Below the pieces are notes generated by a model, which was not told where the DNA came from, made no database searches, and saw only the letters and a program-made list of their open reading frames with translations. From Podarcis erhardii (Eukaryota), in the NCBI GenBank assembly GCA_964252035.1, contig OZ176200.1: a stretch of DNA of 64,000 nt; one strand, written 5' to 3'. Both the position numbers and the translations under genes were made by a program. Below are positions 1,730-31,200 of the stretch, one piece after another. The stretch's first letter is position 1. The number at the start of each line of letters is the position of its first letter.

Positions 1730-4700
1730 GTATTTTGAAATGTACATGTTAGATGTGGCACATGTTCACATTTTGTAGATTCCTGGGATGTAGTGCTAAA
1801 TACAGTGTTGTCATAGTTAATATGCACAGACGCTGACAGTAGCTTTAAAAAGAGTTCCAGTTACAGATAGGTAGCCGTGTTGGTCTGCCATAGTCAAAAC
1901 AAAACAAATTCCTTCCAGTAGCACCTTAAAGACCAACTAAGTCAGTTCTTGGTATGAGCTTTCGTGTGCATGCACACTTCTTTAGATAAGTTCTTGGTAT
2001 GAGCTTTCGTGTGCATGCACACTTCTTCAGATACACTCAGTGTATCTGAAGAAGTGTGCATGCACACGAAAGTTCATACCAAGAACTGACTTAGTTGGTC
2101 TTTAAGGTGCTACTGGAAGGAATTTGTTTTGTTTTAAAAAGAGTATCACTGGTTCCTGGCTAATAAGCAGTTTGCATTGATCTTGTAGGGTACAACTAAC
2201 TGCATACAGTTTTCACTTGCTATTTATGTTCAGAATTGCATGATTTCAGTGCATATTAGTGTAATCTTCCTATGAAACCACTCATCAGCATCTACCGTGA
2301 AGGCAGTGTATAGGAACTGAGAGAACATGTGCTCTCCATCAGTAGGTTTTTCATCATCTAACTTCAGACATTTAACATTTTTGTGGTGGTTTTGAAGTGC
2401 TTATTTAGAACATGAAAAGTTTTAGTAGCTCCGTGGTGATTTTGGAATAACTGGTTCAATGTAACTGGAAAATATTTAAATGAAAAAACTTCAAAGATTT
2501 TGGAGATTCATTATCTAAGGTTATGCTATTTTTGTCTATGTATACCTTGAAAATGAATGCAGACTTTGTTCTCACAGCAAATAAACCCTATGAACACGTA
2601 AATCAGTTGCTAACAGATTACAAAAAAGCCCTAAACTAAACTTGTACAAATAAATCAATATGAACATCTTTTTATTATGGCTAGCATTTCTACTTGGACA
2701 AAGTAGATCTGTAGTGTTGTGGGCAGAGTGTATTTAAATGGAATAATTGCAGATTTCATTTGAATTGAGGCATTGTAACTCATTGAGCAGAATACCTTAA
2801 TTTGAATCTTTATTCAAATCTACTCTGTTTACAAAATTTTACTTCTCAGTGGTTGATATCACCATTAATATGCTGATTGCAACTAAAAAATGTAGACACT
2901 TCAGTCTAGGAAGGTGCATGGAAAGCTAATAACAACATTATTAATTTCCTTTGTCTACTTCCTTAGGCAAAATTGGCAAAAAACTATGGCATGACACGCA
3001 TGGATCCATACTGCAGAATACGACTTGGCTATGCTGTCTATGAAACTCCCACAGCTCACAATGGAGCCAAGAATCCCCGATGGAACAAAGTTATTCAGTG
3101 CACTGTTCCACCTGGAGTGGATTCTTTCTATCTGGAAATCTTTGACGAGGTAAGAGCGTTAAAAAACACCCTGATTTGTAAAGAGGTTGGCTTAGGGGAG
3201 GAGGGATGTTTGGGGGGCACAATTAGTATGAAGTTTCAGTTCATACTAATTGAGAACATTCTCTTTGGGCCTCTACGGTCATTTTTGTTTTCTGCCCTTT
3301 ATCCTAGGTAGTCTGTATTGAGAGCTGAGCCTAAAAAAAATACAGAACCTTTGTCTGCTTCCTTAAGCAAAATTGGCAAAACACTATGAAATCTGTATCG
3401 TTGTGCTTATGGAAGGGCTTTTGAGCTGTTCAGTGCCTCTGCTAATGGGGAAAGGAGGGCAGGCAATTGCTTCCAATTCCAATTCCTCCATGCAGCCTCC
3501 TGTGCCTCCCAAAATTAGCTCCAGATAGCAACTCTCACAGAAATTATTTCCCTTTCGCTATAAATGCAAACACTTCATATTATCAGTGCAAAAATAAAAT
3601 GTTTTCTTAAACATAAAAATCAGTTCATGCATCCATCTGGTAGTTACTTTTTTCTCCCAAACTAGGTAGCTCCTAGTTCTCATGCTGGTAAATTCTCCAA
3701 GGCAATGTTTCACTTGCATGAATTAGGTTTATTTACTTTAGAGCATGGGTGAGAAGCTTCTTGCCAAGTTAGGCTTGTCTCATCTTCCAGTGTAGCCCCA
3801 CAAGGCTGTTCTCCCTTGGCCACACCACACACACGTCACTCACCTGACATCGTTGACTTTGAGTGGAACAGAAAACTGGAGCTGCAAAGAAACAACCAGG
3901 AGCCATAGAGTGTTTTTTTTTATTACAGTGGTACCTCTGGTTGCGAACGGGATCCGTTCCGGAGCCCCCTTCGCAATCTGAAAGGAACGCAACCCATGTC
4001 TGCGCACACACGGGTTGCGATTCACCGCTTCTTTGCATGCGTGTGACGTCATTTTGCGTGTGTGTGCATGCACGAGCGGCGAAACCTGGAAGTAACCCTT
4101 TTCGGTACTTCTGGGCCGCACCAGGACACAACTTGAAAACACGCAACCTGAAGCAAACATAACATGAGGTATGACTGTATTCCTCTGTAGCTCTGCCCAT
4201 CTGTCAAATGTGGTCTACAGGGGGTTGGCCATAATTTGATCTGACCTGTTCCCACTCTTCTTTAGAGGCTTTAAGTAGCCATCTGTGTGCATTATTGTAA
4301 TGTTTGTAAAACAAAATCTTGAGGTTGCAGCCAGTGGTTGAAAAAGCCCATGGCAATTCACACATCCAATATTTTCCCTTATCCTCCTTCTCCCTGTACC
4401 TCCCCAAAAACCACTCTCGAAAGTTGGCAGAACTACTAAACATTTGTGAACGGTGTTGCACAAAGCTATAGTAAGAGGGGGAAGGGGAGTAGTTGCTTTT
4501 TGCTTTGTAATCTTTGGATACAATGCTTGGAATTCCACACCATTTTAAAATCTCCTTGTTCAGTTCCTGTTTATCTCTTTAACGTATAATGACAATAGAA
4601 AAAGTTTGGCACTGGTAAGAGTCTTTGGGCCAAATTCAGCTAGCTAACCCTGTCAGTGGAAAACCACACAAGGATTTCTGCTGGTGCAACAGGGCTTTCC

Positions 4701-28200: not shown

Positions 28201-31200
28201 GAAGCAGGTAAGTGGGCTTTGGCTTTGCATGTGAGATATATTGTATATGGGACAGAGAGAGATTGGCTTGTCCCAGAACTAGCCACCCATGAGCCACATT
28301 ACCAAGACGACATTTGAACTTGCATCACCTGGCATCCAAATCCAATACATCATAAATATATTTGAATGATGAGAAATAATCAGAACTTAGAGGAGTCAAG
28401 GCTGCTTTTAAATGCTACGAAATCAATTCAAATTGTGACATTAATGGTAATGAACAATTCTACCTTGTCCTACTGATTCTAATATTAACTGGGGTAGGGA
28501 ACCCGCAGTCATTCAGATGTTCCTGAACTACAATTCTGATCATCGCTGACCACTGAGGTTGAAGAGAGTTAGAATCCAACAACATTTGAAGGGCCACAAG
28601 TTCCCCACCCTTGATTTAAGCACTAACTCAGGTAGTCTGGCAACCTGGATCTCACTGGACCCAGCTTGACCTCAGTGCTTGATAAACACAAGGCAATTGC
28701 ATAATCAGGTTTAACTAGCTAGCTTTTTATTTTGTGATTGGGCACCACCTATTTAGGGAGCAACAGATTATTTGCAGGATCAGATTCTTCACTTCTTGCA
28801 AGTGACTCCCATTATTTTGGGTGCAAGTTTCTGTGTTTCCTTGTTTGATGTCTCACAGCTCACTAGATCCTTAATCCACAGAACTTTCACATGCCTTCCT
28901 TCTGACCTTCTAGCTAAGTCGTAGATGAGTTCTCAAATATCAGGTAGACAGTTGCTGCCATGAGAGCCAGGCTTACAGATACTGAATGACCATTCAAATC
29001 CCCACAGCCTGTTCAGCTTAGCTTGTTCACATTTCAGTCATTTACTTGGACCCCTCAGTGTTTACTTGGACCCCTCAGTGTTTACTTGGACCCCTCAGTG
29101 TGTATCTGAAGAAGTGTGCATGCACACGAAAGCTCATACCTAGAACTAACTTAGTTGGTCTTTAAGGTGCTACTGGAAGGATTTTTTTTATTTTATTTTG
29201 ACTATGGCAGACCAACACGGCTACCTATCTGTAACCCTCAGTGTTCATTTGTGTATGCAGTGTAGACTTTGGATCTCTAAATTCATGTGTCCCAATTCGA
29301 AAAGAAGGCCAAGAATGAGCAAAAAGTATGCTTGAGAACGCCTACAATAATCATTGTCAGTTGGGTAAAGAAAGGAGAAGAAGAGTGAGAATACATAATT
29401 ACCTGTAGTATCTCAGTGGTTTCATTCATGTTGATTATGCATGCGTTCTGGACACACTTTCCACAACACTCCCCAGCTTCTACCTGGTACTCGTAACCCT
29501 GTTTGGCAGACAGGAAAAGTTAACCATGCATGATACATGTGGAAGAGGCAGCCACCTGCAATGATTAAGCCTGCAATCCTAACCCCACTTACCTTGGGAA
29601 AAGACCACTGAATTCAATAGCACTTACTTGTGTACAGACATAAGTTAGGATTGTTCTGTTGGGAAAGAAGCAGTAATAGGGGAAATAAAGATTTGTGCTT
29701 ACCTCTTGGCAATCCTTATCACACGTAACTGGTTGACATTTTACAAGATTTGTATTGGAGTCTGGGTCCTTTTCAGAGCTGCAGACACACGTTTCACAAG
29801 GCTTGCTAGGAACAGGCATTTCAGCCTGGGAAAAGTCAAAGAATAGCAGTTGTATTTATAAACAGAGTGTATAAAGCAACTTTGTGAACCAAATATCAAA
29901 TTCTTTTTAAAGATTTCTAACATACAAAATGTTTTCAACTCTTTTATAAGAACTCCATTAATATTCTAAATAAGCAATCAGGGAACAGAAAAACGATGAA
30001 TGATAGCAACTTATCCAAGGCCACCAAGTGGGTTCAGAAACGAGCAAATATTTGAAGCCACGTTTCTAAGAATCCAAGATACTTCTGTGGAAACATCCTT
30101 GATTTTTAAGCTGAGTATTAATTCCTGTTTTATATTGCAACTGTGTTTGCCATGGTTACACCAATATTATATTTGCATTTTCCTAAGTAAACGTGTAAAG
30201 TGTAAGAAGAAATATATGTCTAATAGGGTTGCCAGCTTCTTAACCAACCTCAGCTGCTGTGTTTAACAGCCATGTGATCTAGAGAGATAAGAAGGTATAA
30301 TGTTCATTTCCATGCTGTGAAAAGTTTCAGCTGTTAATTTTCTAAAGTCAAGCTGCTGTTAATTTTTGAAAGTCAAGCTGCTGCACCAGAGCAGGTCAGG
30401 TGTTTTTCTAGATATTTGGCAAACCTAACCTAAACTTGCAGTGGCCATTCCTTGGCATGCATCCTTGAGTATTTTGTAATGTGGTTCTGACTTTCACACA
30501 TGAGATGTTTACTGTGGGAAATGTTGATATAGTCCCCATGCAACTCAAGAAAAATATGATTGTGAAGCAGCACACTCATATCATGATTCATGATATATTG
30601 CGAGGTCAAAAATTATGAAACAATATCACAATATGGATTTCAAGCCAGTCTGGGTTGATATATTTATATATTGCCCAGCCATACCCAGGATCCACATGAC
30701 ATTGTCATCAACATATCAACCCATATTCCCCCCATCTTTAATTCAGATTTACTTTTTCCAGAGAAACTCTGCTAGGTTAAAAAAATGTTGCCAATGACCC
30801 ATTTGCGATATCTCAACAACCCATTCCTAATATTAAGCTCCTGTCTAAATGCATCCCAAAACTACCCATTATTAGAAGGCAGAAAACAGTGGCTTGAGTT
30901 GCCTCAATGAATTGCTTTTCATCTGGCAGAAATATCTGCCCAATGTCAAACATTTTCCATAGTTAATGAAGCGGGTGTCCATTTGAAATGGCCATTTAGA
31001 AACTTCCCTGTCTGGACACTTAAGTATAGATGGTTTAAATAATTTAGAATGATTTGCACTTTTACTCAAAAAATGCTTGCTTGGGAAGTTCCCCTCCCCC
31101 ACCCTCTGTAGTATTCTAATATGGCCTCAAGTTCAAATTCATAACTTTAAATTTTACATTTTATTTTGCACCTTCCCCAACCTACTAGAGCGCTCAAAGC

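What the first reader, a model, noticed from the sequence alone, without database searches (positions are those of the whole stretch)
1861..29244. Family of short Penelope-derived inserts carrying minimal, probably dimer-acting hammerhead ribozymes
Seen: three near-identical young inserts (1861-2135, 20916-21134, 29101-29234), each with flanking direct repeats, contain GUAU-CUGAAGA-A-GUGUGCAUGCACAC-GAAA-GC-UC-AUAC. This has the hammerhead core (CUGANGA, GAAA, UH), a 4-bp stem I, a fully palindromic stem II and a 4-nt self-complementary stem III (AGCU) too short to close intramolecularly. Known: Penelope-like elements carry minimal type I hammerheads in their pseudo-LTRs (Cervera and de la Pena 2014), and such small variants cleave as dimers (Lunse et al. 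2017). Inference: this is a recently mobile, non-coding ribozyme-bearing retroelement family in this lizard, inserting at about 3 copies per 64 kb within and between innate-immune/mucosal genes.
Basis: partly seen in the sequence, partly recalled or inferred. Interest (0 to 1): 0.8.

Follow-up and report, generated by a model that had tools for sequence, protein, structure and literature searches.

The report
Truncated Penelope retrotransposon copies with hammerheads
Three young insertions in this lizard window are the short end-pieces of a very abundant Penelope-like retrotransposon, each carrying the minimal hammerhead ribozyme motif typical of that class: real and recently mobile, but an ordinary example of a known kind.

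Summary
A 38-nt minimal hammerhead (HHR) occurs intact three times and with one point change twice; none is expected by chance. It lies in three inserts at 1856-2135, 20915-21134 and 29102-29234, each with 9-11-bp target-site duplications.

All insertion hallmarks of Penelope-like elements (PLEs) are present:
- extreme 5' truncation;
- an inverted second arm in two inserts;
- a 34-35-nt "tail" on only one arm;
- variable duplication length;
- an HHR without a helix III hairpin, built like the tested Poseidon_Ac ribozyme of the green anole.

Contigs of two related organisms skip insert 3 exactly, so it is a lineage-specific insertion. Between 7,800 and 17,000 contigs per genome run carry the module.

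Not shown: cleavage, dimer action, the parent reverse-transcriptase ORF, and whether the 134-nt module is a family of its own. Nearest-neighbour folding does not favour the active dimer. No arm here starts at the predicted cut site. Rfam hammerhead models do not detect the motif.

Most likely these are dead-on-arrival copies running from the internal reverse-transcription start to the RNA 5' end.

This scan has 152 notes mentioning Penelope and hammerhead, several on palindromic or hammerhead-headed inserts like these in this genome. It is a new member of a known kind, of low to moderate interest.

The parts
1847..1855 (.). Insert 1, left target-site duplication (AAAAAGAGT).
   Evidence: The identical 9-mer occurs at 2136-2144.
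1856..2037 (-). Insert 1, long arm, read on the minus strand. It holds two HHR units 45 nt apart, the body, the tail and a 5-nt extension (CTGGA).
1861..1895 (-). Insert 1, 35-nt tail, present on this arm only.
   Evidence: Identical to the tails at 21102-21135 and 29200-29234.
1952..1989 (-). Inner HHR unit, degenerate. G5 is changed to A (CUAAAGA) and helix I is reduced to 3 bp.
1997..2034 (-). Intact minimal HHR: helix I GUAU/AUAC, CUGAAGA, an unpaired A, helix II, GAAA, GC, UC.
2038..2038 (.). Single base between the two head-to-head arms. It reads G on the minus strand, directly 5' of the long arm.
   Evidence: Reading it as a cap-templated G is inference.
2039..2135 (+). Insert 1, inverted short arm without tail. 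Its HHR at 2042-2079 has C16.2 changed to U (GUUC).
   Evidence: (I3: 93 nt, 98% complementary).
2136..2144 (.). Insert 1, right target-site duplication.
20904..20914 (.). Insert 2, left target-site duplication (ATTAGTAATTC). It contains the ATT motif that the anole PLE endonuclease prefers.
   Evidence: PMC11167929.
20915..21015 (-). Insert 2, arm without tail, with an intact HHR at 20975-21012.
21016..21018 (.). 3-nt filler (GAA) at the head-to-head junction.
21019..21134 (+). Insert 2, arm cut 5' inside helix II, so it lacks CUGAAGA. It carries the tail (21102-21135).
   Evidence: (I4: 85 nt, 100% complementary).
21135..21145 (.). Insert 2, right target-site duplication. Its first A is shared with the end of the tail.
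29042..29101 (+). Three tandem copies of a 20-nt piece of the target, directly upstream of insert 3. The empty allele has one copy.
   Evidence: (a 183-nt skip).
29102..29234 (+). Insert 3: a single arm with tail. Its 5' end is ambiguous within 29100-29102 because of GT microhomology.
29102..29139 (+). Intact minimal HHR. The predicted cut lies between C at 29135 and A at 29136.
29200..29234 (+). Tail. It holds the AC-rich stretch and an ATG (29204-29206) whose frame stays open to the end of the module.
   Evidence: Many contigs end at both 29199 and 29235.
29235..29245 (.). Insert 3, downstream target-site duplication (11 nt).
   Evidence: The joint runs 29051 to 29235 with 11 shared letters.

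Best explanation
The three inserts are dead-on-arrival copies of the terminal module of a very abundant, recently active Penelope-like retrotransposon (PLE) of this lizard lineage. The module runs from the hammerhead to the reverse-transcription (RT) start site and is about 100 nt without the tail, or about 134 nt with it.

Proposed mechanism:
1. The element's RT/endonuclease nicks both target strands 9-11 bp apart.
2. It starts cDNA synthesis internally on the element RNA at one of two sites, about 64 nt (no tail) or about 99 nt (with tail) 3' of the hammerhead cut site.
3. It copies up to the 5' end of the RNA, which lies 2-6 nt in front of hammerhead helix I.
4. Priming from one nick gives a single arm (insert 3). 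Priming from both nicks gives two arms joined head to head, one with and one without the tail (inserts 1 and 2).

The hammerhead is the minimal type I variant of PLEs. It has a complete catalytic core, a 4-bp helix I, an unpaired base before helix II, and only the palindrome AGCU in place of helix III. It can therefore complete helix III only with a second copy, and probably needs the element's protein, as in the anole element Poseidon_Ac.

What is shown: the motif, the anatomy, the empty site, the abundance and the two classes of 3' end.

What is inferred: the PLE enzyme, twin priming, the 5' end being a transcription start, and any cleavage. The templates of these particular copies were uncut.
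For: - Motif beyond chance.
- Target duplications of 9, 11 and 11 bp.
- Empty site: one contig each from organisms B and C joins 29051 to 29235. It skips 183 nt, with 11 letters shared, while organism A holds both element-flank junctions (tables 5 and 8).
- Tail: the identical 34-35 nt occurs on exactly one arm of each palindromic insert and on the single arm.
- Family-wide ends: contigs run into unrelated sequence after 29199 (30-32 contigs in two of the three genome runs) and after 29235 (50-55 contigs per genome run) (table 7).
- These features equal the PLE hallmarks listed in PMC8557442 and PMC8969392.
- They also fit the two internal RT start sites, the roughly 34-nt tail and the cleavage and extension of both strands shown in vitro for Poseidon_Ac in PMC11167929.
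- The Poseidon_Ac HHR has the same order of parts: CUGANGA, one unpaired nt, helix II, GAAA, a 2-nt centre, UC. Its helix III palindrome is ACGU, against AGCU here, so palindromy is kept through a change on both sides.
- Both arms of an insert share subfamily-specific variants, as expected from one event.
- 5' ends cluster. Four of five full arms start within 3 nt. 41-46 contigs per genome run break to unrelated AT-rich flanks at 29102. A second class continues upstream with one shared sequence.
- Abundance: 7,783 to 17,350 contigs at 90% likeness or more in three genome runs. Six arms in 64 kb points the same way.
Against: - No RT/GIY-YIG ORF was tied to this module. None is in the window, and no lizard genome could be searched.
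- Rfam hammerhead models give nothing even at E 10.
- The module folds no better than shuffles, z = +0.91.
- The active double-hammerhead is disfavoured in silico.
- Head-to-tail joints of the bare module exist in contigs (table 5c), which a stand-alone tandem family would also give.
- The transcription-start reading rests on a 30-letter loose-end consensus with only 0.5-0.67 agreement and on one junction base.
Confidence: 0.8

Rival explanations
1. The roughly 134-nt module is a non-autonomous element in its own right, SINE- or retrozyme-like. Its own source copies or tandem arrays would be transcribed. Hammerhead dimers would cut the transcript to unit length, the units might be circularised, and a PLE reverse transcriptase would copy them in trans.
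For: - The 5' end is fixed just before the hammerhead in most arms and in 41-46 contigs per genome run.
- Head-to-tail joints run from 29235 back to 29102-29104 with 2-3 letters between (table 5c).
- Copy number is very high.
- All three frames of the module body contain stops.
- Vertebrate non-LTR retrozymes have been proposed as PLE derivatives (bioRxiv 10.64898/2026.07.22.740005; PMC7229834).
Against: - Copies that start at the RNA 5' end do not carry an upstream promoter, so they cannot be sources.
- A comparable number of contigs continue upstream with one conserved sequence.
- The tandem joints are a tiny share of the depth.
- The joint lies at the tail and 5' end, not at the hammerhead cut site as a cleaved and ligated circle would give.
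- The hammerhead is the minimal PLE type, not the canonical loop-loop type of retrozymes, and known retrozyme units are 170-400 nt.
Confidence: 0.15
2. The hammerhead motif is catalytically idle in vivo. It would be kept because the same sequence serves something else, such as a core promoter or 5' leader, protein binding, or RNA dimerisation through the 14-nt palindrome of helix II. The ribozyme resemblance would be inherited baggage.
For: - Min-HHRs cleave very poorly in vitro, even as dimers (PMC4209133).
- Poseidon_Ac needs protein to cleave, its hammerhead mutants still insert, and no RNA-seq reads end at its cut site (PMC11167929).
- Naiad PLEs thrive without hammerheads (PMC8557442).
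- Here no arm, and no well-supported contig class, starts at 29136.
- The swapped helix II duplex is by far the most stable dimer.
Against: - The complete core, the UH site and the palindromic helix III are kept between unrelated PLE families.
- In four runs no position of the core or helix II shows a second letter at 10% of depth, while six positions in the next 100 nt do (table 3). This is weak evidence and not significant.
- C3G/G8C rescue shows that the Poseidon_Ac motif is a true ribozyme.
Confidence: 0.3
3. The inserts are miniature inverted-repeat DNA transposons, with terminal inverted repeats and target duplications, or the palindromes are hairpin RNA (miRNA-like) genes.
For: - Inserts 1 and 2 are near-perfect palindromes with flanking duplications.
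- There are sub-threshold Rfam miRNA hairpin matches, for example MIR1222 at 64.8 bits.
Against: - Insert 3 is a single arm, yet has a duplication and an exact empty site.
- The arms are unequal, with the tail on one side only.
- Duplication length varies (9 and 11 bp).
- The central junctions differ: a 45-nt hammerhead reiteration in insert 1 and an arm cut in helix II in insert 2.
- All miRNA matches lie below their gathering scores and simply reflect a long hairpin.
- No tRNA-like part is present.
Confidence: 0.02

Closest known systems
Poseidon_Ac (PAc), the Penelope/Poseidon-clade PLE of Anolis carolinensis (Frangieh et al. 2024, PMC11167929)
   Same: - The same order of hammerhead parts, with no helix III hairpin and a 4-nt palindrome.
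- A hammerhead followed by two alternative 3' ends about 35 nt apart (the tail).
- AT-rich or ATT-containing targets in two of the three inserts.
- Inverted arms, which fit cleavage and extension of both strands.
- Templates not cut at the hammerhead.
   Different: - No recognisable sequence similarity by eye.
- Helix II here is a 14-nt perfect palindrome.
- The PAc ORF starts in helix II. Here the body of the module has stops in all frames, and the only ATG that stays open sits in the tail.
- The hammerhead-to-end distances are somewhat longer here (about 64 and 99 nt, against roughly 55 and 90).
- The parent ORF is not seen.
Minimal hammerheads of metazoan PLEs (Cervera and de la Pena 2014, PMC4209133; dimer cleavage by Lunse et al. 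2017, as summarised in PMC6765202)
   Same: - Short helix I (4 bp).
- An unpaired nucleotide 5' of a long helix II.
- No helix III loop.
- Massive copy number.
- Reported for reptiles (turtle and snakes).
   Different: This particular sequence variant was found in no paper of the held library. Its activity is untested.
Metazoan non-LTR retrozymes (Cervera and de la Pena 2020, PMC7229834)
   Same: - Small non-coding units that carry a type I hammerhead.
- A proposed dependence on PLE reverse transcriptase.
- Some head-to-tail joints of the unit.
   Different: - Retrozymes are tandem arrays of 170-400-nt units with canonical hammerheads that have loop-loop contacts, and they are expressed as circular RNA.
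- Here the copies are dispersed single or inverted arms of 100-135 nt with a minimal hammerhead.
- No circular RNA evidence exists here.

Membership tests
Hammerhead ribozyme, minimal type I variant of PLEs | Catalytic core CUGANGA ... GAAA ... UH in the right order. | tested here: met
   CUGAAGA, GAAA and U16.1-C17 are present in three intact copies. Two further copies have one change each.
Hammerhead ribozyme, minimal type I variant of PLEs | Helix I of 4-5 bp open to the ends, a long helix II preceded by one unpaired nt, and no helix III hairpin but a short palindrome. | tested here: met
   Helix I is GUAU/AUAC, followed by an unpaired A. Helix II is 5 bp plus a CAUG loop. AGCU stands in place of helix III. 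The monomer minimum-energy fold forms helices I and II. Criteria are from PMC4209133.
Hammerhead ribozyme, minimal type I variant of PLEs | Site-specific self-cleavage after C17, as a dimer or with protein. | not testable with these tools
   Only contigs were available, with no raw RNA reads. In silico the active dimer is not favoured.
Rfam hammerhead families (covariance models) | Match at or near the gathering score. | tested here: not met
   No hammerhead hit at gathering score or at E up to 10. To my knowledge this is expected, because those models include a helix III hairpin. PMC4209133 needed a dedicated descriptor.
Penelope-like elements | A single ORF with a telomerase-like reverse transcriptase plus a GIY-YIG endonuclease. 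| tested here: inconclusive
   Absent from the inserts and from the window. The copies are far too truncated to hold it, and the parent could not be fetched. A metagenome scan found nothing.
Penelope-like elements | A high degree of 5' truncation, with an inverted 5'-truncated copy adjacent. | tested here: met
   Arms are 97-182 nt. Inserts 1 and 2 are head-to-head pairs. Criterion from PMC8557442.
Penelope-like elements | A 30-40-bp tail extension, often at only one end of an insertion. | tested here: met
   A 34-35-nt tail sits on one arm per insert. Family-wide ends fall at 29199 and 29235.
Penelope-like elements | A hammerhead in the pseudo-LTR near the 3' end, and tandem arrangements. | tested here: met
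   The hammerhead lies 64-99 nt from the 3' ends. Head-to-tail joints are seen in contigs (table 5c).
Non-LTR retrozymes | Tandem repeats of 170-400 nt with a canonical type I hammerhead, expressed as circular RNA. | tested here: not met
   In the window the copies are dispersed or inverted, the unit is about 134 nt, and the hammerhead is minimal. Circular RNA is not testable.
MITE / DNA transposon | Two terminal inverted repeats in every copy and a target duplication of fixed length. | tested here: not met
   Insert 3 has one arm only, the arms are unequal, and duplications are 9 and 11 bp.

The most novel reading that the evidence does not exclude
The bare hammerhead-to-tail module, where it stands head to tail (joints 29235 to 29102-29104 in contigs), would act as the smallest known retrozyme, with a unit of about 136 nt. 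It would also be the first in an amniote.

On this reading, multimeric transcripts are cut by hammerhead dimers, perhaps aided by the 14-nt palindromic helix II acting as an RNA dimerisation site. The units are circularised, and the PLE enzyme copies them from its internal start sites. That would explain both the copy number near 10^5 and the reiterated hammerhead tips.
Probability: 0.12. Interest if true: 0.6.

Novelty: new member of a known kind. Interest (0 to 1): 0.25.

Why it matters
Penelope-like elements (PLEs) are the least understood class of retrotransposon. The role of their hammerheads and the origin of their tail and inverted arms are still open questions.

This family offers a large natural record of insertion products, on the order of 10^4-10^5 copies. 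In that record the 5' ends, the two 3' ends and the head-to-head junctions can be read base by base. The record agrees with the only in vitro study, of the anole element Poseidon_Ac: internal initiation at two sites, use of both target strands, and uncut templates.

That makes the family useful as corroboration and as a source of testable constructs. It is not a new kind of element or ribozyme.

For annotation, the inserts should be masked as PLE fragments. They should not be read as regulatory hairpins or miRNA genes in the TOLLIP-mucin region.

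Tried and rejected
- **Rfam:** no family reached its gathering score on the whole window. At E up to 10 on inserts 1 and 3, no hammerhead appeared. Only sub-threshold miRNA hairpin matches turned up, caused by the palindrome, and I rejected them as generic hairpin hits.
- **More diverged copies:** BLAST with 7-nt words found none in the window.
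- **Upstream part of the element:** the 13-mer taken from the loose-end consensus gave one 1-mismatch hit at 13046. Such a hit was reached in 13 of 100 shuffles, and it is not followed by the hammerhead. I treat it as chance.
- **Metagenome contigs:** an exact-pattern scan for the hammerhead gave 0 matches.
- **Literature:** four 20-mers of the element matched no paper. Lunse et al. 2017 is not held in the library, so I cite it only through the review PMC6765202.
- **Parent ORF:** no PLE-sized ORF exists in the window. I compared it with the module by eye only.
- **tRNA-derived SINE:** no tRNA-like sequence was found.
- **Thermodynamic signal:** the module is no more stable than shuffles, z = +0.91.
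- **Expression:** only Logan contigs were on offer. The one run guessed to be RNA holds the module inside longer contigs. This shows neither independent transcription nor cleavage.
- **Copy number:** the summed word depths are not a copy number by the tool's own warning, so I use them only as an order-of-magnitude hint.

Full report
**1. What is in the sequence**

At up to 3 mismatches the 34-nt core occurs five times, and no shuffle gave any match.
- 1997-2030(-), 20975-21008(-) and 29106-29139(+) are exact.
- 1952-1985(-) has G5 changed to A.
- 2046-2079(+) has C16.2 changed to U.

I also wrote a structural descriptor. It requires a 4-bp helix I, CUGANGA, 0-1 unpaired nt, a helix II of at least 4 bp, GAAA, a self-complementary dinucleotide, UH and the helix I partner. 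It returns exactly the three intact copies (1997-2034-, 20975-21012-, 29102-29139+). It returned nothing in 300 Markov simulations of the window.

A word-7 BLAST of the module finds only these three loci.

**2. Anatomy of the three inserts**

- *Insert 3 (29102-29234)* is a single arm. It consists of the hammerhead (HHR), a body, a T-rich stretch and a 35-nt terminal piece (29200-29234). An 11-nt target duplication flanks it.
- *Insert 2 (20915-21134)* is two arms joined head to head, 100% complementary over 85 nt.
  - The minus-strand arm is complete at its 5' end but stops before the 35-nt piece.
  - The plus-strand arm is cut 5' inside helix II but carries that piece.
  - The target duplication is ATTAGTAATTC.
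- *Insert 1 (1856-2135)* is again two head-to-head arms, 98% complementary over 93 nt.
  - The minus-strand arm has the terminal piece plus 5 more bases, and a 45-nt reiteration of the HHR tip.
  - The plus-strand arm lacks the terminal piece.
  - The target duplication is AAAAAGAGT.

Three regularities stand out.
- The terminal piece is identical in all three tailed arms.
- The two arms of one insert share subfamily-specific variants, as expected if one event made both.
- Four of the five arms with an intact 5' part start within 3 nt of each other, 2-6 nt before helix I.

**3. Evidence from other genomes**

Only Logan contigs were available.

*Empty site.* In runs of two related organisms (X4, X6), a single contig joins 29051 directly to 29235. 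It skips 183 nt, with 11 letters common to both sides. This is an exact empty site carrying one copy of the target. The best holder (X1) has contigs that run from the flanks into both ends of the filled allele. Insert 3 is therefore a lineage-specific insertion, and the duplication is a true target-site duplication.

*Abundance.* The module is laid by 9,342, 17,350 and 7,783 contigs at 90% likeness or more in the three genome runs. The tool warns that summed depth is not a copy number. Even so, six arms in 64 kb also suggests about 10^5 arms in a genome of lizard size.

*Where contigs leave the module.*
- Contigs break into unrelated AT-rich sequence before 29102 (41-46 per genome run).
- They do so after 29199 (30-32 contigs, listed for two of the three genome runs).
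- They do so after 29235 (50-55 per genome run).
- A further class (22-51) continues upstream of 29100 with one shared sequence.

So the family has one preferred 5' end, two preferred 3' ends about 35 nt apart, and longer members. No well-supported class begins at the predicted cut site (29136).

*Other observations.* Joints from 29235 back to 29102-29104, with 2-3 letters between, show some head-to-tail copies. A run guessed to be RNA (X18) holds the module in 515 contigs, but inside longer contigs. That shows neither independent transcription nor cleavage.

**4. What it is**

Craig et al. 2021 (PMC8557442) and Goubert et al. 2022 (PMC8969392) list the structural marks of Penelope-like element (PLE) insertions:
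- strong 5' truncation;
- an inverted 5'-truncated copy next to it;
- a 30-40-bp tail, often at only one end;
- pseudo-LTRs with a hammerhead.

All of these are met here.

Frangieh et al. 2024 (PMC11167929) showed the following for the anole element Poseidon_Ac.
- The protein cleaves and extends both target strands.
- It prefers ATT in AT-rich DNA.
- It starts reverse transcription at two internal sites, and the interval between them is the roughly 34-nt tail.
- The HHR cleaves only with protein present.
- HHR mutants still insert.
- No RNA reads end at the cut site.

The lizard inserts look like the genomic products of that reaction. The outer ends fall at two sites 35 nt apart. Where both nicks were used, the arms join head to head, one with and one without the tail. 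The templates were uncut.

The Poseidon_Ac sequence has the same HHR layout: CUGAGGA, one unpaired U, helix II, GAAA, CG, UC. Its helix III palindrome is ACGU where this family has AGCU. Palindromy is thus kept through a change on both sides. That fits the dimer model of Cervera and de la Pena 2014 (PMC4209133) and of Lunse et al. 2017 (as summarised in PMC6765202).

The features those authors give for metazoan min-HHRs are all present: a 4-5-bp helix I, an unpaired nt 5' of a long helix II, and no helix III loop.

**5. How it probably works, and what is only inferred**

- The shared upstream sequence ends in TTCA followed by GT. To my knowledge this fits the initiator pattern BBCABW, with the A as the first copied base.
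- An A/T-rich block resembling a TATA box lies about 20-30 nt further up, in a 30-letter consensus of only 0.5-0.67 agreement.
- One junction (2038) has an extra G that could be cap-templated.

Because initiation is internal, an mRNA that starts at the HHR would give a 100-134-nt run-off copy whenever the enzyme starts on the 5'-proximal module. Such copies lack the promoter and are dead on arrival.

The same upstream letters (a pyrimidine run followed by AG) also resemble a 3' splice site. An intron end lies at the same place relative to helix I in Drosophila virilis Penelope. I could not test this.

*Possible start of the parent ORF.* The tail holds an ATG (29204) in good context. Its frame stays open to the module's end, and through the 5-nt extension in insert 1. 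The parent ORF may start there. This would parallel Poseidon_Ac, whose tail lies inside the start of its ORF.

*Cleavage is untested, and the energetics are unfavourable.*

| Conformation | Energy (kcal/mol) |
|---|---|
| Double hammerhead, two 38-mers | -11.1 |
| Two monomers | -13.6 |
| Duplex with the 14-nt palindromic helix II swapped between molecules | -30.6 |

The natural tandem pair in insert 1 also misfolds in the prediction. The whole module is no more stable than shuffles (z = +0.91). This fits the weak, factor-dependent activity reported for this class.

**6. Rivals**

- *A stand-alone retrozyme-like family* is not excluded. The fixed 5' end, the head-to-tail joints and the absence of an ORF in the body speak for it. 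Against it:
  - copies that start at the RNA 5' end carry no promoter;
  - longer members exist;
  - the joints are rare and do not lie at the cut site.
- *A MITE reading* fails on insert 3, on the unequal arms and on the variable duplications.
- *The miRNA hits* lie below gathering score and are generic hairpin matches.
- *tRNA-derived SINE:* no tRNA-like part is present.

**7. Limits**

- No lizard assembly, Dfam or Repbase was available.
- The reverse-transcriptase/GIY-YIG parent was not found.
I did not verify this.
- Rfam's silence is a real negative for those models. It is expected for a motif without a helix III hairpin.

**8. Verdict**

The Penelope-like origin and the recent mobility are well supported. 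Dimer catalysis and status as a separate family are unproven. This scan has 152 notes mentioning Penelope and hammerhead, and several of them describe palindromic or hammerhead-headed Penelope inserts like these in this genome. It is a new member of a known kind. Interest is about 0.25.

Noticed in passing
window 29042-29101 and 29235-29245: Insert 3 is preceded by three tandem copies of a 20-nt piece of its own target. Each has one extra C compared with the empty allele. Related organisms have a single copy (183-nt skip). The insertion event, or its repair, seems to have multiplied the target, which is unusual for a simple staggered-cut duplication.
   Followed up: partly
window 1944-2037 (minus strand): The hammerhead tip of insert 1 is reiterated with a 45-nt period. 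The inner unit starts 4 nt later than the outer one. Contigs of other copies show similar back-joints within the hammerhead-bearing first ~40 nt (table 5c lists, for example, 29139 back to 29105 and 29140 back to 29102, each with a few letters between). This looks like template switching at the RNA 5' end and fits earlier notes of 49-nt arrays elsewhere in this genome.
   Followed up: partly
window 29135 (family-wide): The cleavage-site C17 reads T in 3-17% of the summed contig depth in four runs. U17 would still satisfy the UH rule. No position of the core or helix II shows a variant at 10% or more, while six positions in the following 100 nt do (table 3).
   Followed up: no
window 45602-56095 (minus strand): A 3,497-codon open frame holds 12 Mucin2_WxxW (CysD) domains, E = 9e-285. 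It is built from 885-bp repeats with 147-bp sub-repeats. This is the central exon of a gel-forming mucin.
   Followed up: partly
window 9201-9328 and 40704-40841: Two short palindromic elements, related to each other, have arms of 50-59 nt that are 81-92% complementary with a 20-nt spacer (I11, I14, I15). They are probably another interspersed repeat family and are unrelated to the Penelope inserts.
   Followed up: no
window 29537-29598: Contig depth rises 5- to 50-fold over the flank in all three genome runs, and some contigs join the Penelope tail end directly to this place (tables 2 and 5). Another repeat probably sits here.
   Followed up: no
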